A stretch of 63,424 nucleotides of DNA, filler included, from Octopus bimaculoides (lineage: Eukaryota), in assembly GCF_001194135.2 (NCBI RefSeq). It is 5 parts of 5 records of this genome, joined end to end, with 100 filler letters (N's around TTAATTAATTAA, not from the genome) between each part and the next. Parts side by side here need not be neighbours in the genome. Positions count along the whole stretch, not along the records: positions 35,549 to 61,519 come from NC_068983.1; 4 more parts are not named here. One strand, written 5' to 3'. Positions 50,766-59,105 of this stretch are shown here, in pieces. Under the pieces are notes generated by a model. The model made no database searches. It worked only from the letters and a program-made list of their open reading frames with translations, and was not told the origin of the DNA. How positions within the stretch are numbered: the stretch's first letter is position 1; each line of letters begins with the position of its first letter. Made by a program: the position numbers and the translations under genes.

Positions 50766-53450
50766 ATATTTAGGTTTATTTGTTTTTATTTTCTTCATGA
50801 TGCGTTGTCTATTACTTCGAAAAATTTTACTATGACGTTGTAAATTGTTGATGACGTCAAATTTATGTAGAAACAGTAACGTTTGTAGATGTTTATTATT
50901 TCTCATCCTAAACTTCATTCAATTAATTTACTTTGTTTTTTAACTCCGAATGCATTAACAGTGTGCTCATTTCTACATGCATACTCTGTAATACGCAGAT
51001 GATAACTAAGAATTATTTAATTTCTAAACAATGAAAGTTTTAAATATTTGGTTTTATCACGTTTTATAATTCAAATTATAAAATCGATAATAGAGAGATA
51101 TTGTCGTAAACTGAAATAAGGGCCAGAAATCTGAAAAATTTAATTTTCGTAATTACATTTTCCCGATTCAGATCTTTATTTTAGGTTTTAAAAATCTTGA
51201 AATAGCTACCAACCTACATCGATTTTAATGTATGAACAGTAGATATTTTTCTTTTTTTTTATTTCTTTATATAGTTTGTCAGTATGAAATTATAAACAAA
51301 AAAGTAAACGGAAAAGAAAAAGGATTTGCAATAAAATTAATATTAAATTGCTCGAATGTTGAATGTGTGGAATATCTGCGTTTGTAAGTATATGTGTCTG
51401 TATGAGTGTGTGCGAGTCTGTATGTTTATGTTAATGTGCGTAGCTGTTTAGGTGAATGAGTACGAGTCTCTGTGAAGCAAAAAAAGATAAAATTGAGAGA
51501 AATATTTTTGGGGCGAGTTTGACAACAAATTTGTGTGTGTGTAGCTCGGGCGAACTGAAGACGGGAAACACATAATGAAATGTTATTAATCATCCCAAAA
51601 TAACTTGAAATATTCGTTTCTTACTACAACAATTTCTCAAAGCTAACCTACCTGCAACTTTAGAATTCATATAGTCTTCCAGTACACACTTTTAGCCATT
51701 TTCGAAAATATTTAATGTTGTTTAAAGACAAATTAATTTTCTGTTAAAATAGTTATTCTGTTCAAATTTGTATTTGAAAATCCATATTATTTAAACTTTT
51801 CAGTATAATTCGTGAAATGTTTCTGGTGGTCAACTCGATTGGTGACAGATAATAAGGAAGAACGTTCAGTTTGATAGACGAACCTTTTGTTGGATGGTTG
51901 CAATGCATGTTTTATGAAAACATTACATAGTAAAGATGACGAGAGCTAGAGAATCACAGAAAATGACTGTCGTGAAGCGACAGTGTTTACAATATAAAGT
52001 TTTCCTGTTATACAGGAACAGGCTGGATGGTAAAGATAAATAAATATCATCCGTCACTACAACCCTTATAGATCGAGAATCAACTTTGATGCTCAACCTG
52101 CGAGAAATAGCAGGCAAATTTACTTCAAATCACTCCCTACTATTTTAAATAAGGAAATAGAACATTACAAAATGGAGTCCTGAATACTTTAAAAAAAAAA
52201 CGAAATATTCGCAACTGAAATACGCTCAACATTAGATCTGCTTAGTCAAAGTTGACTTGAAGTTAAATAATAATACTACAGATCATAGAATATGTGAACT
52301 CTGAAACGAGAATTCCGAGTTCAAATCTCCACGAAGCGTATTTTGTTTTTATTTATGAAACAACTGTTTAGATTTTAATGTAAATATTATACGATATTTG
52401 TTTCAAATTGGTCAGTGACTCTTTAAATGTTGCAATATGTATATACTCACATTCACATACATACATACACACACACACATTCATACATAAGTACATACAT
52501 ACAAACATATGTACGTACGGACGTGCGTGCATACATACATTCATACATACATACATACATACATACATACGATCAAGTGACTTGCTCCCCAATCGTGGAT
52601 GCTAGAAACCTTCGGACTGGTTAAAGTTCCAGACATCAGGAACTTTATCAGGATCATGGATTACCTCACTTCGTCCTGGGCCACCTTTGTAAAGTTAAAT
52701 ACACGAAGTGATTCTATTGTCATTGATAGGATACAGTATCACATCGGTATTATTCGGTGTGACAGTCTCTCTGAGATATTATTTAAACTTTTAGTAAACC
52801 ACTGTCGTTTCTGATTAGGAAATTTGACGGATAAAAGATTGGCCCTCAGAAAAGCAGTAGCACTAACTTAACACATTGTTCTTTTGTGTCTGACCTGAAA
52901 ATGCAAGCCAAGAATATGGATGGCGTGGAGGAAAGCTTTGATCAAGATATCACATGCTCAAAAATTAGGATAAATGTTATATAGCTGCAAAGCGAAGGAG
53001 AATTACAAGCCCAGGTGACATTGTACTCCTGACTAGCTCTCCATTATTTCACGAGAAATGCTACATGTACCTAGGATTAAATAATAATTCTTTCTATGAC
53101 GGACTCTGTGACAAGGAGCGGACGATCAGGAAATAAAACACTAGGATAAAGAAAATACGGCCCTCGGAACTTACTATATAAAACGATAGCTCACAGTGTG
53201 TTTGCTGTGCCAGAACTTTTACCAACACTCTGGCTACTATTCCTAAATAGTATCTTTCTCTTTGATACGCATTTATCTAATATTTATCGTCCCACACTAG
53301 ATGAGATACGGACTGCTGATATCAAAACCCGAAAATTTTTAACACTTTCCAGAAATTTTCAAATCTTTACTTAAAATGGAGACTATGTAGCAGAACATTA
53401 TTTACATTAGTTACATTCGACGGATATTTGTCCTCATCTTGTTTGTTGTT

Positions 53451-53496
53451 AACACAACGTTTCGGTTGATATACCCTCCAGCCTTCTTCAGGTGTC
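53451..53496 (-). ncRNA. Minimal type-I hammerhead ribozyme
   Basis: GACAC-CTGAAGA-A-GGCTG-gagggtatat-CAACC-GAAAC-GTT-GTGTT: stem I GACAC/GTGTT, stem II with one mismatch, palindromic ACGT stem III, GUU cleavage triplet. Confidence 0.8.
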
Positions 53497-53596
53497 TTGG
53501 GGAAATTTTGAACCTGGGTTCTCATTCCTAAGGTATTTTTCGATGTTACTATTATCATTATTATTATTATTATTATTATTGTTCAGGTCACTGCTT

Positions 53597-53656
53597 GGAA
53601 TCGAACTCGGAATCTTGGGGTTAGTAGCCCGCGCTGTTAACCACTACGCCATATGC
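53597..53656 (-). promoter_or_regulatory. tRNA-derived Pol III internal promoter (A and B boxes)
   Basis: A-box TGGCGTAGTGG (53641-51), GGG-CTACTAA-CCC anticodon-like arm, B-box GAGTTCGATTCC (53597-608). Confidence 0.85.
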
Positions 53657-54873
53657 GTAGATGAGAACAAATATCTGTCGAATGTAAATAATGTAAATAA
53701 TGTACATAATTCCTCATCTCTTAAATATAGAATATGTAGCAGAAGTTTAACATCAATTCCATGAGACTTTTAATGCCGTATCACATTCTTTTGACATCTA
53801 CTAACCATCAAATACCGAAGTTCTGCTCATCATGAAAGTTGGAAAGGAACTTCTCCGAAAGTATTCTGATTGATAGCAAAAGACATGCACTCAGAGGAGT
53901 TGCAGAACTCTGCTGCAATATGTCATCAGAAAAGAGGCTGCATAAATACCATACAAACAAAAGGTCTTACACGGTTACATATCTAGAAGGCTTCAAAATG
54001 ACAGCAACATTAACAACCAGAGTAATTTATCCTTGACGAACAACCTGAACATTACCTTTCACTTTGAAGGCTATACAGGAGAAAAAATACCTGATATACA
54101 AAATGGATAGGGATACAAATATATCACATAGCTTGATAAAAGATACAAGCTTTGTTCTGACGGCTTTATCTACATGTGAAACACACTCTTGTGGTTTGGT
54201 CAATATATAACGAAACCTGTGGAAAGGATAATCTTGAGGAAATACATATAAGAAACTACGGTGATCTGAATAGTATAATCACACATAACTCGACGTATTT
54301 TTGAAACATTCTTGTCGAGACTTTAATAAAATGCAAGGCCAACAGATTTGATAGAAAAAAGAAACTATGCTGAGTTGTTGAAAATGGTTGCCCAACAAAT
54401 ATCAACATAATAAAAAGCGAAAATCGATACCAAACTGCTCCTGCAGTTAGTTTCCCAAGTGACATGGATCATTGCTTAGGAGTTTGCGAATCCACTATAC
54501 AAAGTACACGTGAAGCTTTCTATTAATTATTACTGGAATGACAGGATTTGTATCGTATTTCGTGGATCAAAACATGGCCGGACTTTAGTTCTAGAAGAAA
54601 GGATTCAACGCTACAGAGGACAATGAAATGTAAGACAGTAAAAATTTCCACAAAAGATAAATGGCTGCTTGAAGAATGAGTAACGGAACAAGATTATTTC
54701 CTTTATAACGTTTCGACTGAGTATTTGGCCGGTTAAAAGGAGTTCTAAAATTCCAATCAAAAAGGGAACAACGTAGATATATCCATACATACACATGTAC
54801 ATAGTTCGTGCGTATGATTATAAGTGAACGAAGTTTGTCTGTATGTGTTTGGTATGTAGTAGAGCTAACCATC

Positions 54874-54996: not shown

Positions 54997-57900
54997 CGGT
55001 GCCGCGATCGAATATGCCTTTTTAGCCCAGCTAAAGATCTACAATGTCTTGTACAGAATTGGCAGCTAAAACCTTTACCGGTAGTAGCCGGTTGTAGTTG
55101 TAACTGGGCTTCATGTACCTTTGCATGTTTAAGTACTCCCGCCGAATTGCATTCCCTTCTACATACCTGACAGATATGATTGCATTCCCTTCTACATACC
55201 TGACAGATATGATTCCCTTCTACATACCTGACAGATATGGTTGTCAATCATCTGTCTCGCTTTATGACTCTGAAGATGACTCTTGAGTCCAGCTTTACTG
55301 AGGCAGGGCCTTGCACAGACACTGCATGTCAGCATCATAGGAAGACCCTTACCATCTGGAAGTGCAACAGCGATGCCCTTCCTGACATTCCTCCTTACTT
55401 TCTCATGTGCAACTCGAGATTTCACAAAAGTAACTATCCCCTAGTGCACAATCCTTCTCCACCTACTACAGTCGATAGCTATGCGCTCCGATGTCTCAAG
55501 AGAAATGCAAGCATCTCTTAAGGAAGCCTTCAGCAAGTCCTTATGCCTCTTTTTTGGTTTATGTGGAGGTCGTTCTCCTTTAGCTAACTCTCCATAAAAG
55601 GGTTGTTTCGGCATCCTTGAATCCTTCATTCTAACCATATGACCACTCCATTTGAGCTTCTATACTTTCACACCGAGAGCTTTCCAATATTTAAAGATCA
55701 CTGATGCGATCCTCCCACTTAATATCATATATCCGTCTGAGACACATGTGATGGAAACGTTCCAGTTGTTTAAAGTGGTATCGACGTGGTATCACAGGCA
55801 TAAAGAAGAGAAGAAAGCACACATGCCTTGTATACCTTTATCTTTGTCTTCCTGCATATGTCTCGCCGACTCCTGAGGCGCCTTTCTAGCCTTCCGAAAG
55901 CATCACTTACTTTCCTAATTATGTATGGAATTTCATTATCCAAATTGCTATATCTATTAACAGTGCTTCCCAGGTAGACAAACTGATCAACTACATCAAG
56001 TCGTTTACCATACACATAGATATTTGGTTCACTATACTGCTTACCAGGGGCAGGTTGGTACATGGCAACAGTTTTCTTGAGACTGACTGTCAATCCTAAG
56101 GCAGTGCAAGCATCAGAGAATGCATTCAAAATGTGTTGCACATCAATCTCTGTGTGCGCTACTAGATCACAATCATCTGCATACAAAAGGTCTCCTATGA
56201 TAGAGGTAAATACCTTTGTTTTTCCAGCAAAGCGCCTGATATTAAATATGCTGCCAAAGGTTCGATAATGGATGTAAACACCATATCTGCAGTCTCTGAA
56301 TGCAATACAGAAAGCCATTTCAAAATATGTAGCAAATAGGGTCGGTACCAGAATATCCCCCTATTTCACTCCATTTTGTATTGAGATAGGATCCTACATT
56401 TTCCCTCTAACACTAACCCTACCCTTCATGTCTTCATGAAAAGACCTAACCAAAAGCAAGGAACTTTTCAGGACACCCAAGTTTCTGGAGGACTTTCCAC
56501 AGTGCATTTCTATTAACGGTATCAAAAGCTTTTGTCAGATCGACAAAAACCTGATATAAATTCAGACCCTGTTCCACACACTTCTCCTGAAGCTGTCTAG
56601 CTGAAAAGATCACATCAACAGTGCCGCGTACCACATGAAAGCCAGATTGACTTTCTGGAAGAACACAATCTGCAACGTGTTTCAGCAGACGGTCCAGAAG
56701 CACCCTGCATAAACTTTTTCCTACGACAGAAAGTAATGATATTCCCCTATAATTACAACAATCATTCCTGTTCCACTTCCCTTATATACGACCACCATTA
56801 CTGTATCTCTCCAGTCCTCAGGTACAGATTCACTAGCCCATATCCTACCAAACAAAGAGTGAAGTTTCTGCAGAAATTTCTCACCACCATGCTGTAACAA
56901 CTCCGTATGTATGCCATCCATACCTGGAGATCTCCCATTATTCATCCTTGAGACAGCCACTGCAACATCTTCCAACTTTGGTGATTCTGCGATAGCCACC
57001 TTCACAGGTAATCCAGGGATGAGATTGAGAACATCCTCACTAACTACAGACTGCTGATTCAAAAGTTTATCAAAGTGTTCTCGCCACCTTCGCAGAACTC
57101 CTTGTGAATCACGAAGAAGTTCTTTATCATCCCTGCTTTGAAGTGGCGTCATCAGAGAAGAAGTCGGTCCATAAACTTCTCGCAAGAGACCATACAACAG
57201 CTTTGTGTTATTGGAATCCGACGCCACTTGTATCTCATCAGCCTTCTTACTCCACCATGTATCCCTCATCTGAGAGAGCCTCCACCTCACACGTGATTTT
57301 ACATCCTTGAGTTCCCTATGCAACACTTCCCTCTCCCGTGGCTTTGCTGACAAATAGCGTGACAATAAATCAGTCAATAAATTATCTATATGTTCATCAT
57401 TTTCTTTACACCAATCTTGATACTTTCTTTGTATCAATCTCAGAACTTTCTTGTCTATATTATAAACTGACTTTTTAAGGGTCGGCCAATCCTCCCCAAT
57501 ATCTGCAACATTCATTTCCTCTCGTAAAGTTCTCTTCACTTAAGACAATCAACATTCAGTCTTTTAGGCAGAGTAAACCCTACAACCCAGATTTTACGTT
57601 TTGTGACTAATTCCACTTTTGCACGCACTAGATGGTGGCCAGTCCAACACTCAGCCCCACGAAGAACATGAACACACTGCACATCTCGTCTGCCACGCAC
57701 CCTAACAAGGATGTAATCCAGAATATGCCATTCTTTAGATGCATGGTGCACCCATGTGGTTTTAAACTTTTTCTTTTGTTGAAACATGGTATTGGTAATA
57801 CAGACGCAGCTCCTCACATGTCTGCAGCAGAAGCATGCCATTACTATTACACTTTCTCACCCCACACTTTCCAATTACAGTCTGTGTGTTAAAATCCCTA

Positions 57901-58848
57901 CCCACTCTAGCATTAAAATCACCCAGTACGATGACTTTGCCTGAGGGATATTTCTTATAATGCCCTTCAAAGCATGTTAGAAAGAAACTTGTTCGTCATC
58001 AGTATAGCACATAGTTGGAGCATACACACTCACCAAGGTCACATAATTTCCTTTAACCAAAGGAATTCTCATGGACATAAGCCGCTCGTTAATCCCGACT
58101 GGGAATTCTTCCAACTTGTCCACAAGAGTAGTCTTAACAGCAAATGCCTCTCCAGCCTCTCCGCTAAACTCTTCATTCCTCCCTTTCCAAAAGAATGTAT
58201 ATTTCCCACTAGATTTTGTAAGATGACCATCTCCAACTAATCTTGTCTCGGATAAAGCAACGATGTCAAGATCATAGCGTCAAAACTCCTTCGCAACAAA
58301 CGCAGTTCGTTCAGGATATTCAGAGGATTCGCGGTCAAGCAGCGTCCGTACAATCCAACAGCCAATATTCAATATTTTATTTGGTTCTATCACAGTAGCA
58401 TGATGAAAGCCGGGTTCAGACTGTGATGCTCTGGAGCCCCGTGGTCCCAGAGTCCTTACTGCCATTTATTTTTATACTGTTTTGGTACATCATTGAGTAT
58501 TTGCTTTTTAAGGCTACAGCCAGCCATTCAGTTGAGACTCACAGCACTATCAGCAATCATCAATTAGTTAATCAATTTAATCAATCAATCAATCAATGTT
58601 GTTATCGTGCAATGCCTGTGAAAGATTTTTTTTAAGTGAGAAAAGGCTGTGCACTGAGTCAATCCCTCTCACTAAGCAACAGCAGCCATAATCCGAAAAG
58701 AAGAACAAGTCAACATCATCGGTAACCACTGAGCTGCAGGTTTAATGTCGGAGTTACCCCAGTTACCTTCTCCTAGAAGGATGCCCTAACAAACGCTAGG
58801 GGTCCTTCACTCCCTGAATTACTTGTGAGGGCAGCTCTTGCAGACCAC
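54993..58848 (-). mobile_element. Near full-length RTE-clade LINE, disrupted, with three C-terminal C2H2 fingers
   Basis: 5' UTR with CTAGGAGAAGG; LNIGCWIVRTL, DIVALSETRL, LGDFNA, ILDYILVR, TGHHLV (APE); SPGMDGI, DLTKAFDTVNR, LLYADD (RT); MPKQPFYGEL; stop at 54993-95. Confidence 0.92.
55148..55239. repeat. Tandem triplication inside the second zinc finger of the RTE
   Basis: ATTCCCTTCTACATACCTGACAGATATG at 55151-78, 55184-211 and 55212-39. Confidence 0.95.
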
Positions 58849-59105
58849 CTATGTTGGAAGAAGTCGCTTTGGTTGTCTCAAGGATGAATAATGGGAGGTC
58901 TCCGGGTATGGATGGCATTCATGCAGAGTTGTTGCAGCATGGTGGTGAGAAAAATCTACAGTAACTTCACTCCTTGTTTGACAGGATATGGGATAGTGAA
59001 TCTGTACCTGAGGACTGGAGAGATACAGTAATGGTGGTCTTATATAAGGGAAAGGGCAACAGGAATGATTGTGGTAACTACAGGGGAATATCATTATTTT
59101 ACGGT
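58849..59105 (+). pseudogene. Inverted duplicate of an internal RT segment of the adjacent RTE
   Basis: Reverse complement of ~56730-56985 (VSRMNNGRSPGMDGIH.ELLQHGGEK..SVPEDWRDTVMVV.YKGKG), abutting the RTE 5' UTR. Confidence 0.88.

What the first reader, a model, noticed from the sequence alone, without database searches (positions are those of the whole stretch)
53384..53744. Candidate Penelope-mobilised 'ribozyme SINE': tRNA Pol III head + hammerhead + inverted tail + 12-bp TSD
Seen in sequence: a 337-bp insert bounded by the exact TSD TATGTAGCAGAA, inside an old R4/Dong LINE. On the minus strand it reads tRNA-like head with good A and B boxes, an (AAT)n linker, a minimal type-I hammerhead (CUGAAGA/GAAAC, stem I GACAC:GTGTT, palindromic ACGT stem III, GUU site), then a tail. 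Just upstream of the head a second, longer copy of the tail runs the opposite way (53660-53732), so two 3' ends point outward. Established knowledge: minimal type-I HHRs with palindromic stem III and inverted terminal copies are hallmarks of Penelope-like elements and retrozymes, whereas classical SINEs use LINE tails and have no HHR. Inference: a Pol III-driven non-autonomous RNA mobilised by a PLE reverse transcriptase/GIY-YIG, i.e. a SINE-retrozyme hybrid. I cannot check whether it is already catalogued.
Basis: partly seen in the sequence, partly recalled or inferred. Interest (0 to 1): 0.9.

Follow-up and report, generated by a model that had tools for sequence, protein, structure and literature searches.

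The report
tRNA-headed retroposon carrying Penelope-type hammerhead
A 337-bp retroposed insert combines a tRNA-like Pol III promoter with a minimal hammerhead ribozyme motif and an insertion scar typical of Penelope-like retroelements, so it may be a SINE that parasitises Penelope elements; only this one copy could be examined.

Summary
An exact 12-bp direct repeat bounds a 337-bp insert. On the minus strand the insert reads: 74-nt tRNA-related head (A box exact, B box one mismatch), (AAT)n, 48-nt body, 46-nt hammerhead motif, 44-nt tail. An inverted 44-nt tail copy (41/44) abuts the predicted tRNA +1.

The hammerhead has the published hallmarks of Penelope-like-element (PLE) minimal hammerheads. 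A strict descriptor hit only here and in 0 of 400 simulated sequences. The promoter pair hit only here and in 0 of 300. The insertion layout matches published PLE insertion anatomy: an inverted 5'-truncated copy at the 5' end, a short junction extension at one end, and a hammerhead 60 nt from the 3' end.

Two reader details fail. The inverted copy is 44 nt, not 73. The "R4/Dong host LINE" got no Pfam support.

The central inference is untested: that this is a multi-copy Pol III SINE family mobilised by PLE enzymes. No second copy could be reached in the 26-kb piece or in any collection, so a one-off chimera and a LINE-mobilised SINE remain open.

SINE-like elements with a Pol III promoter and a hammerhead are already known (Schistosoma Sm-alpha and Sj-alpha). 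At best this is a new variant of a known kind.

The parts
53384..53395 (.). Left copy of the target-site duplication, TATGTAGCAGAA. Imperfect similarity to the right side continues upstream to about 53370.
53396..53439 (-). 3' tail T1 (44 nt): AGATGAGGACAAATATCCGTCGAATGTAACTAATGTAAATAATG. It ends in about 2.5 copies of a 9-nt unit and abuts the left duplication copy.
53440..53450 (-). 11-nt spacer AACAACAAACA between hammerhead and tail. Together with GUUGU of helix I it can form a competing hairpin, GUUGU/ACAAC.
53451..53496 (-). Minimal type I hammerhead motif.
- Helix I: GACAC/GUGUU (5 bp, including one G-U).
- Core: CUGAAGA.
- One extra A before helix II.
- Helix II: GGCUGG/UCAACC (G10.1-C11.1; one C-A mismatch).
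- GAA, then A15.1-C-G-U16.1 (palindromic ACGU, no loop), then U17.
- Predicted cleavage between 53456 and 53455, 60 nt from the 3' end.
   Evidence: hallmarks from PMC4209133
53497..53544 (-). 48-nt body of unknown origin.
53545..53584 (-). (AAT)n-rich linker. It may be the fossil tail of a shorter tRNA-SINE module, marking where two modules were fused.
   Evidence: the fusion reading is inference
53585..53658 (-). tRNA-related head (74 nt) with A box 53651-53641 and B box 53608-53597. Predicted tRNA position +1 is 53658. The cloverleaf is badly degraded.
   Evidence: no Rfam tRNA hit
53659..53702 (+). Inverted, 5'-truncated copy of the tail (T2), 41/44 identical to T1. It abuts the 5' end of the head directly.
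53703..53719 (-). 17-nt fold-back piece T3, AGATGAGGAATTATGTA. Its first 9 nt match the first 9 nt of the tail and the rest is tail-end-like. With the end of T2 it forms a 16-nt near-palindrome.
   Evidence: (I4)
53720..53732 (.). 13 nt (CTTAAATATAGAA on the plus strand) resembling the DNA just upstream of the left duplication copy (CTTAAAATGGAGAC). Either an imperfect extension of the target duplication or a junction extension.
53733..53744 (.). Right copy of the target-site duplication, TATGTAGCAGAA.
53373..53376 (-). First TTTT on the sense (minus) strand, 20 nt past the element's 3' end. There is no T4 run inside the 337-nt element on this strand, while the antisense strand has two.

Best explanation
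This is one retroposed copy of a short, non-coding, composite element on the minus strand. A tRNA-related head supplies an internal RNA polymerase III promoter. An (AAT)n linker joins it to a 3' module of about 150 nt that contains a PLE-type minimal hammerhead and a 44-nt tail.

Proposed cycle (all steps inferred):
1. Pol III starts near 53658, reads through the element, which has no T4 run, and stops at a T-run in the flanking DNA.
2. The reverse transcriptase / GIY-YIG endonuclease of an autonomous Penelope-like element recognises the 3' module, nicks the target and copies the RNA by target-primed reverse transcription up to its 5' end.
3. A second priming event on the other target strand copies only 44 nt of another tail. 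This gives the inverted copy.
4. A fold-back or template jump adds 17 nt.
5. Staggered nicks give a duplication of 12 bp (perhaps up to 26 bp).

The hammerhead has no helix III of its own, so it could cleave only when two copies pair through ACGU. Its role, whether in processing or as part of the 3' recognition structure, is as unknown here as it is in PLEs.

Shown: the sequence features and their improbability by chance. Inferred: transcription, the PLE partner, family status and any cleavage.
For: - Exact 12-bp duplication placed directly at the two outward-pointing tail ends.
- A/B box pair unique in the piece, 0 of 300 simulations.
- Hammerhead motif unique in the piece, 0 of 400 simulations with the strict descriptor and 0.063 expected with a very relaxed one.
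- The motif has the features Cervera & de la Pena listed as emerging independently of their search descriptor for PLE minimal hammerheads: a nucleotide between A9 and 10.1, G10.1-C11.1, palindromic 15.2-16.2, short helix I and long helix II (PMC4209133).
- Craig et al. 2021 describe PLE insertions as often having an inverted 5'-truncated copy adjacent to the 5' end, a 30-40-bp extension at one end, variable duplication length and hammerheads near the 3' end (PMC8557442). All four have a counterpart here.
- The inverted copy abuts the predicted tRNA +1 exactly, so the unit is full length from a Pol III start.
- The sense strand has no T4 run.
- The tail matches nothing else in the piece, including the 3' region of the neighbouring APE-type LINE.
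Against: - Only one copy was seen. There is no second copy in 26 kb and none in any reachable collection. Family status and the recurrence of the head+hammerhead junction are therefore untested.
- No PLE sequence from this genome was available to compare with the tail.
- Rfam hammerhead and tRNA models give no hit.
- The hammerhead fold is not the minimum-free-energy structure (-5.3 versus -5.7 kcal/mol). Helix II has a C-A mismatch, and a competing hairpin uses the 3' strand of helix I.
- There is no direct (tandem) pseudo-LTR at this locus.
- A tail ending in short tandem repeats and a 12-bp duplication also fit LINE-mobilised SINEs.
- The descriptors were written after seeing the candidate, and the simulations are first-order Markov only.
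Confidence: 0.5

Rival explanations
1. One-off chimera or nested composite. An ordinary 5'-truncated insertion of a PLE, or of a PLE-derived non-autonomous element, supplied the 3' end of about 150 nt plus the inverted tail copy. It acquired a short tRNA-SINE RNA (head + (AAT)n tail) in one of two ways: the reverse transcriptase switched template during the same event, or the SINE inserted later at the inversion junction. On this reading the head and the hammerhead are not parts of one propagating element.
For: - PLE insertions are typically strongly 5'-truncated with an adjacent inverted copy (PMC8557442). Removing the head and linker (53545-53658) would leave exactly that picture.
- The (AAT)n stretch looks like the 3' tail of a separate short SINE.
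- No second copy with the same junction was found.
Against: - No separate target duplication flanks the head+(AAT)n segment (by inspection). This argues against a later independent insertion.
- The head has the same orientation as the hammerhead and sits exactly between the inverted copy and the body.
- Linker remnants of this kind are usual inside established composite SINEs (general knowledge, e.g. the A-rich linker of dimeric Alu), so the (AAT)n does not discriminate.
Confidence: 0.22
2. A conventional tRNA-derived SINE mobilised by an APE-type LINE that recognises a specific 3' tail ending in short repeats. The inverted tail copy comes from twin priming. The hammerhead-like motif is fortuitous or a dead relic with no link to the mobilising enzyme.
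For: - The tail ends in about 2.5-3.3 copies of a 9-nt unit (AATGTAAAT). This is common in CR1/L2-type LINE and SINE tails (general knowledge).
- 12 bp is a typical LINE-type duplication length.
- APE-type LINE remnants are present in the piece.
- Rfam does not recognise the hammerhead and the fold is not the minimum-free-energy structure.
Against: - The motif is improbable by chance and carries the specific PLE-type hallmarks.
- The tail has no similarity to the LINE in the piece.
Confidence: 0.2
3. A miniature inverted-repeat or fold-back DNA transposon whose 45-bp terminal inverted repeats happen to enclose a tRNA-like fragment.
For: 45-nt inverted repeat at 93% with flanking direct repeats.
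Against: - The right arm is not terminal. 17-30 nt lie between it and the duplication.
- 12 bp or more is longer than the usual duplications of DNA transposon superfamilies (general knowledge).
- The left arm is contiguous with a directional head-body-hammerhead-tail unit.
Confidence: 0.03

Closest known systems
Sm-alpha / Sj-alpha SINE-like elements of Schistosoma (Ferbeyre et al. 1998; Laha et al. 2000; summarised in PMC6765202)
   Same: Short (about 335 bp) non-coding retroposon-like units. An RNA polymerase III promoter is followed by a type I hammerhead.
   Different: - The schistosome ribozyme is a canonical, fast, loop-loop-stabilised type I hammerhead. Here the motif is the minimal, helix-III-less PLE type.
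- Sm-alpha is often in tandem arrays. Here there is a single unit with an inverted tail copy.
- No sequence comparison was possible (the 1998 paper is not held).
Minimal hammerheads of Penelope-like elements (Cervera & de la Pena 2014, PMC4209133)
   Same: - Core CUGANGA/GAAA.
- Extra nucleotide between A9 and 10.1.
- G10.1-C11.1 pair.
- Palindromic 15.2-16.2 with no loop 3.
- Helix I of 4-5 bp and an extended helix II.
- Position near the element's 3' end.
- Occurrence as dispersed single motifs, sometimes paired on opposite strands.
   Different: In PLEs the motif sits in the pseudo-LTR of an element encoding reverse transcriptase and GIY-YIG endonuclease. Here it sits behind a tRNA-related Pol III head in a 263-nt non-coding unit.
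PLE insertion architecture and non-autonomous PLE derivatives (Craig et al. 2021, PMC8557442; short non-autonomous Penelope elements in Heliconius, PMC6685494)
   Same: - Inverted 5'-truncated copy adjacent to the 5' end.
- Short extension at one end only.
- Variable-length duplication.
- 3' end presumably shared with the autonomous element.
   Different: - No direct pseudo-LTR or tandem partial copy at this locus.
- The extension is 17-30 bp rather than 30-40 bp.
- The described non-autonomous PLEs are not reported to carry a tRNA-type promoter.
Metazoan non-LTR retrozymes (Cervera & de la Pena 2020, PMC7229834; Li, Clavereau & Pollet 2026 preprint, 10.64898/2026.07.22.740005)
   Same: Small non-coding hammerhead-bearing elements proposed to be non-autonomous partners of PLEs.
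   Different: Retrozymes are tandem repeats of 170-400 nt with classical type I hammerheads and are expressed as circular RNAs. Here there is a single unit, a minimal hammerhead and a tRNA head. No tandem repeat was found.
Classical tRNA-derived SINEs with LINE-derived tails (e.g. the cephalopod Ceph-SINEs and octopus OK/OR families cited in PMC4758252)
   Same: tRNA-related head with A and B boxes, body, tail and flanking duplication, in a length under 400 bp.
   Different: No hammerhead is reported in those families in the papers read. Their tails match LINE 3' ends. Direct sequence comparison was not possible.

Membership tests
tRNA-derived SINE (SINE2) | Internal Pol III promoter (A and B boxes) in a tRNA-related 5' head | tested here: met
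   A box exact and B box 1 mismatch with a 33-nt gap. Unique in the piece and 0 of 300 simulations. The cloverleaf is detected by ARAGORN only at 70% threshold, and there is no Rfam tRNA hit.
tRNA-derived SINE (SINE2) | Short non-coding unit flanked by a target-site duplication | tested here: met
   263-nt unit inside a 337-bp insert with an exact 12-bp duplication.
tRNA-derived SINE (SINE2) | Dispersed multi-copy family with the same module order | not testable with these tools
   No second copy in the 26-kb piece.
tRNA-derived SINE (SINE2) | 3' end shared with an autonomous partner element | not testable with these tools
   No match to the LINE in the piece. No PLE or other LINE of this genome was available.
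PLE-type minimal hammerhead (min-HHR) | Intact catalytic core: C3-U4-G5-A6-N7-G8-A9, G12-A13-A14, A15.1-U16.1, H17 | tested here: met
   CUGAAGA ... GAA ACGU U.
PLE-type minimal hammerhead (min-HHR) | Unpaired nucleotide between A9 and 10.1, and a G10.1-C11.1 pair | tested here: met
   An extra A, then G...C closing helix II. Hallmarks from PMC4209133.
PLE-type minimal hammerhead (min-HHR) | No helix III loop; palindromic 15.2-16.2 allowing a dimeric helix III | tested here: met
   A-CG-U (ACGU) directly follows GAA.
PLE-type minimal hammerhead (min-HHR) | Helix I of 4-5 bp and an extended helix II (6-8 bp) | tested here: inconclusive
   Helix I is 5 bp including one G-U. Helix II has 6 positions with one C-A mismatch and one G-U. 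The fold scores -5.3 versus a minimum of -5.7 kcal/mol, and there is a competing hairpin.
PLE-type minimal hammerhead (min-HHR) | Compensatory changes among copies; self-cleavage as a dimer | not testable with these tools
   Only a single copy is available, and no experiment was possible.
Rfam hammerhead families (type I, II, III, HH9, HH10) | Score against the covariance models | tested here: not met
   No hit at E<=10 on 371 nt or on the whole piece. By my reading these models expect a helix III hairpin, which minimal hammerheads lack.
PLE-mediated insertion / non-autonomous PLE derivative | Inverted 5'-truncated copy immediately adjacent to the 5' end | tested here: met
   T2 at 53659-53702, 41/44 identical to T1, abutting head position +1. 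Criterion from PMC8557442.
PLE-mediated insertion / non-autonomous PLE derivative | [quoted passage not shown] | tested here: inconclusive
   17-30 nt lie at the right end only (53703-53732). Part of this may instead be an imperfect continuation of the duplication.
PLE-mediated insertion / non-autonomous PLE derivative | Pseudo-LTR (direct partial tandem copy) | tested here: not met
   No direct repeat of element sequence at or near the locus.
PLE-mediated insertion / non-autonomous PLE derivative | 3' end homologous to an autonomous PLE (reverse transcriptase + GIY-YIG) of the same genome | not testable with these tools
   No PLE sequence of this genome is available. None is evident among ORFs of 90 aa or more in the piece.
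Metazoan non-LTR retrozyme | Tandem repeats of 170-400 nt, each with a classical type I hammerhead | tested here: not met
   Single unit with no tandem array. The hammerhead is the minimal type.
MITE / fold-back DNA transposon | Inverted repeats terminal at both ends, next to a short duplication | tested here: not met
   The right arm is separated from the duplication by 17-30 nt, and the duplication is 12 bp or more.

The most novel reading that the evidence does not exclude
This copy represents a real, multi-copy SINE family. Its Pol III tRNA-type head drives an RNA whose 3' module, including a minimal hammerhead, is borrowed from a Penelope-like element, and the family is mobilised by the PLE reverse transcriptase/GIY-YIG endonuclease. 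That would be a SINE-PLE partnership analogous to SINE-LINE pairs. I found no such partnership described for any tRNA-headed element in the literature I could search, apart from the unexplained Sm-alpha/Sj-alpha case.
Probability: 0.3. Interest if true: 0.7.

Novelty: new variant of a known kind. Interest (0 to 1): 0.5.

Why it matters
How PLE enzymes choose their RNA template is unknown, and so is what the conserved hammerhead in PLE 3' regions is for. The cause of the odd tandem and inverted insertions is also unknown.

A 263-nt Pol III-transcribed passenger carrying only the PLE 3' module would define the minimal cis-requirements for PLE retrotransposition. It would offer a compact reporter for testing them, including core mutants of the hammerhead. 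It would also extend the SINE concept beyond LINE partners, and it could explain the thousands of 'orphan' minimal hammerheads reported in invertebrate genomes.

If it is only a one-off chimera, it is still a small illustration of template switching by a PLE reverse transcriptase.

Tried and rejected
- Rfam scans of the whole piece and of 371 nt around the element gave no tRNA or hammerhead hit. The microRNA 'hits' in the piece are microsatellite artefacts.
- ARAGORN at default settings found nothing. It gave a pseudo-tRNA only at 70% threshold.
- BLAST of the element against the 26-kb piece found no other copy.
- I searched the protein collections with the element's 97-codon open frame, to catch other copies that had been called as ORFs. 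The word-indexed search found nothing, and phmmer against 1.84 billion representatives found nothing.
- Exact-pattern DNA scans:
  - viral contigs, three scans, 0 hits;
  - metagenome contigs, two scans, 0 hits and one chance 21-mer match (L002, unrelated);
  - prokaryotic genome contigs, 0 hits.
- Full-text search of papers for six 13-15-mers of the element found nothing relevant.
- Two LINE proteins were used to reach same-species DNA: the LINE ORF in the piece, then the RT of its homologue on L001. The ORF's best relative is only 49% identical, on an ENA contig of an unknown organism (L001). That contig holds no copy of the element and no minimal hammerhead. The second search gave only relatives about 50% identical.
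- Empty-site test against a host LINE: Pfam finds no reverse transcriptase in the joined flanks or in a stitched frame. By eye there are RT-like strings (GIIRCDSLSEILF, PGDIVLL) on the plus strand upstream, but this is not evidence.
- The absence of T4 runs on the sense strand is consistent with Pol III transcription. By my rough estimate it is not significant on its own (about 1.8 expected, P about 0.17).
- Supplements of the two key PLE papers are not held. Ferbeyre 1998 and Lunse 2017 are not held.
Full report
**What is in the sequence.** The exact 12-mer TATGTAGCAGAA occurs at 53384-53395 and 53733-53744 and bounds 337 bp. Read on the minus strand, the insert has this order:

| Coordinates | Length | Part |
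|---|---|---|
| 53732-53720 | 13 nt | resembles the DNA just upstream of the left repeat |
| 53719-53703 | 17 nt | fold-back piece AGATGAGGAATTATGTA |
| 53702-53659 | 44 nt | inverted copy of the tail, 41/44 identical |
| 53658-53585 | 74 nt | tRNA-related head |
| 53584-53545 | 40 nt | (AAT)n-rich linker |
| 53544-53497 | 48 nt | body |
| 53496-53451 | 46 nt | hammerhead motif |
| 53450-53440 | 11 nt | spacer |
| 53439-53396 | 44 nt | tail |

The tail ends directly at the left repeat. A gapped alignment of the DNA left of each repeat (CTTAAA-ATGGAGAC versus CTTAAATAT--AGAA) suggests the duplication may originally have been 25-26 bp.

**Is it more than chance?**
- Promoter. The A box TGGCGTAGTGG matches TRGCNNAGTGG exactly. 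The B box AGTTCGATTCC has one mismatch to GGTTCGANNCC and lies 33 nt downstream. This pair is the only one in the 26-kb piece on either strand, and it did not occur in 300 first-order Markov simulations of the piece.
- Hammerhead, strict descriptor. The descriptor required CUGANGA, 0-1 extra nucleotide, a G...C-closed helix II of at least 4 pairs, GAAA, a palindromic 15.2-16.2, U16.1, H17 and a helix I of at least 4 pairs. It hit only at 53491 on the minus strand and in 0 of 400 simulations.
- Hammerhead, relaxed descriptors. Two looser descriptors also found only this site. The loosest expects 0.063 hits per piece.
- Caveat. The descriptors were written after seeing the candidate, so these numbers are somewhat generous. 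The features required are nevertheless the published ones.
- Joint occurrence. The promoter and the motif lie 145 nt apart on one strand, inside one unit bounded by a duplication.

**The head.** ARAGORN reports nothing at default settings and a pseudo-tRNA only at 70% of its threshold. Rfam's tRNA model gives no hit. The head is thus a degraded tRNA-related SINE-type region that keeps its promoter boxes; it is not a recent copy of a cellular tRNA. Counting back from the A box (tRNA position 8) places position +1 at 53658, which is exactly where the inverted tail copy begins. The unit therefore runs full length from the expected Pol III start. The sense strand has no T4 run in 337 nt. The first TTTT lies 20 nt beyond the 3' end, and the antisense strand has two. 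This is consistent with Pol III read-through but is not significant on its own.

**The hammerhead.** The motif reads GACAC / CUGAAGA / A / GGCUGG-AGGGUAUA-UCAACC / GAA / ACGU / U | GUGUU. Cervera & de la Pena (PMC4209133) describe the minimal hammerheads of metazoan PLEs by these features:
- a short helix I of 4-5 bp;
- a longer helix II;
- an unpaired nucleotide between A9 and 10.1;
- a highly conserved G10.1-C11.1 pair;
- a palindromic 15.2-16.2 with no loop 3.

They stress that these features emerged independently of their search descriptor. The candidate has each of them.

The weak points are these:
- helix II has one C-A mismatch;
- the hand-drawn fold scores -5.3 kcal/mol against a minimum of -5.7;
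- a hairpin GUUGU/ACAAC competes for the 3' strand of helix I;
- Rfam's hammerhead models do not score it. By my reading this is expected for a motif with no helix III hairpin.

Cleavage would fall between 53456 and 53455, 60 nt from the 3' end. As in PLEs, it would need two copies pairing through ACGU. Published PLE minimal hammerheads cleave poorly in vitro, so a motif match says little about activity.

**The insertion scar.** Craig et al. 2021 (PMC8557442) list the features of PLE insertions:
- strong 5' truncation;
- partial tandems that form pseudo-LTRs;
- a 30-40-bp extension, often at one end only;
- target duplications of variable length;
- hammerheads near the 3' ends.

They state that the tandem/inverted structures and the extension are not seen in target-primed reverse transcription by non-LTR elements. 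This locus has the inverted 5'-truncated copy, a one-sided extension of 17-30 nt, a duplication and a 3'-proximal hammerhead. It lacks a direct pseudo-LTR. The 17-nt piece is built from the first 9 nt and the last few nt of the tail, in the orientation opposite to T2. With the end of T2 it forms a 16-nt near-palindrome (I4). I read this as a fold-back or template jump.

**What could not be tested.**
- The piece holds no second copy of any part of the element.
- I translated the element's 97-codon open frame to look for other copies called as ORFs in public assemblies. Neither the word-indexed search nor an exhaustive phmmer run over 1.84 billion representatives found anything.
- Exact-pattern scans of viral, metagenome and prokaryotic-genome contigs found nothing except one chance 21-mer.
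- The LINE ORF in the piece has a best relative that is only 49% identical. The contig fetched for it (L001) holds no copy and no minimal hammerhead. A second LINE search returned only relatives about 50% identical. The source genome therefore appears to be outside the reach of these tools.
- I also cannot confirm that the source genome is a cephalopod.
- Copy number, recurrence of the head-hammerhead junction, homology of the tail to a PLE, and covariation all remain open.

**Host sequence.** Pfam found no reverse transcriptase in the three plus-strand frames of the joined flanks (the minus-strand frames were translated but not scanned) or in a hand-stitched frame. The 'old R4/Dong LINE' host is therefore not confirmed. 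A decayed APE-type LINE lies on the minus strand at about 55020-59100. Its 3' region shows no similarity to the element's tail.

**Interpretation.**
- Best reading (0.5): a non-autonomous element with a Pol III tRNA-type head and a PLE-derived 3' module, inserted by PLE machinery.
- Rival (0.22): a one-off chimera or nested composite. Removing the head and the (AAT)n would leave a textbook 5'-truncated PLE insertion with an inverted copy. The (AAT)n looks like the tail of a separate short SINE. However, no separate duplication flanks that segment, and such linkers are normal inside established composite SINEs.
- Rival (0.2): a LINE-mobilised SINE with twin priming and a fortuitous or dead hammerhead. 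The 9-nt repeat tail and the 12-bp duplication favour it. The statistics of the motif and the PLE-specific scar count against it.
- Rival (0.03): a MITE. The right inverted arm is not terminal and the duplication is too long.

**Comparison with what is known.**
- SINE-like elements with a Pol III promoter followed by a hammerhead are already known in Schistosoma (Sm-alpha, Sj-alpha; review PMC6765202). Their ribozyme is the canonical type I.
- Metazoan retrozymes are proposed non-autonomous partners of PLEs (PMC7229834; 2026 preprint). They are tandem arrays with classical hammerheads and no tRNA head.
- Short non-autonomous Penelope elements are also reported (PMC6685494; PMC8557442).
- In the papers I could search, I found no description of a tRNA-headed element with a PLE-type minimal hammerhead and a PLE-type insertion scar.
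- Repbase and Dfam could not be consulted, so the element may already be catalogued as an ordinary SINE.

**Verdict.** It rests on one copy, and the kind of element has a precedent. I rate it a possible new variant of a known kind, with interest 0.5.

Noticed in passing
window 40285-40355 and 40757-40827: Two identical (GT)n(AT)n-containing stretches 472 bp apart, on either side of a run of N. They give identical Rfam 'mir-297/mir-466' scores. This is most likely an assembly artefact or a local duplication around a gap, and the microRNA hits are microsatellite artefacts.
   Followed up: no
window ~55020-59100, minus strand: Decayed APE-type LINE with frameshifted ORFs at 55770-56318 (RVT_1), 56721-57539 and 57536-57841. 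It is 65-78% identical at the DNA level to a LINE on an ENA contig of unknown origin (L001), which carries Exo_endo_phos and RVT_1 ORFs. Protein relatives about 50% identical are widespread and include fish.
   Followed up: partly
window 55146-55243: 28/33-bp tandem repeat (about 3.1 copies) inside the C-terminal, cysteine-rich (C2H2-like) coding end of that LINE. It repeats the peptide ...ICQVCRRECN...
   Followed up: no
window 52600-53380, plus strand: Strings that look by eye like reverse-transcriptase motifs (GIIRCDSLSEILF, PGDIVLLTSSP) in different frames upstream of the insertion site. Pfam does not support them.
   Followed up: partly
window 35549-61519: The piece contains 1776 N, mostly next to microsatellites. 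It is about 66% A+T and very rich in (AC)n, (AT)n and (ACAT)n arrays, as expected of a gapped draft assembly of a repeat-rich animal genome.
   Followed up: no
L002 (metagenome contig Ga0194135_10082985) 1276-1296: The only metagenome match to the degenerate B-box pattern. The surrounding sequence is unrelated, so this is a chance 21-mer.
   Followed up: yes
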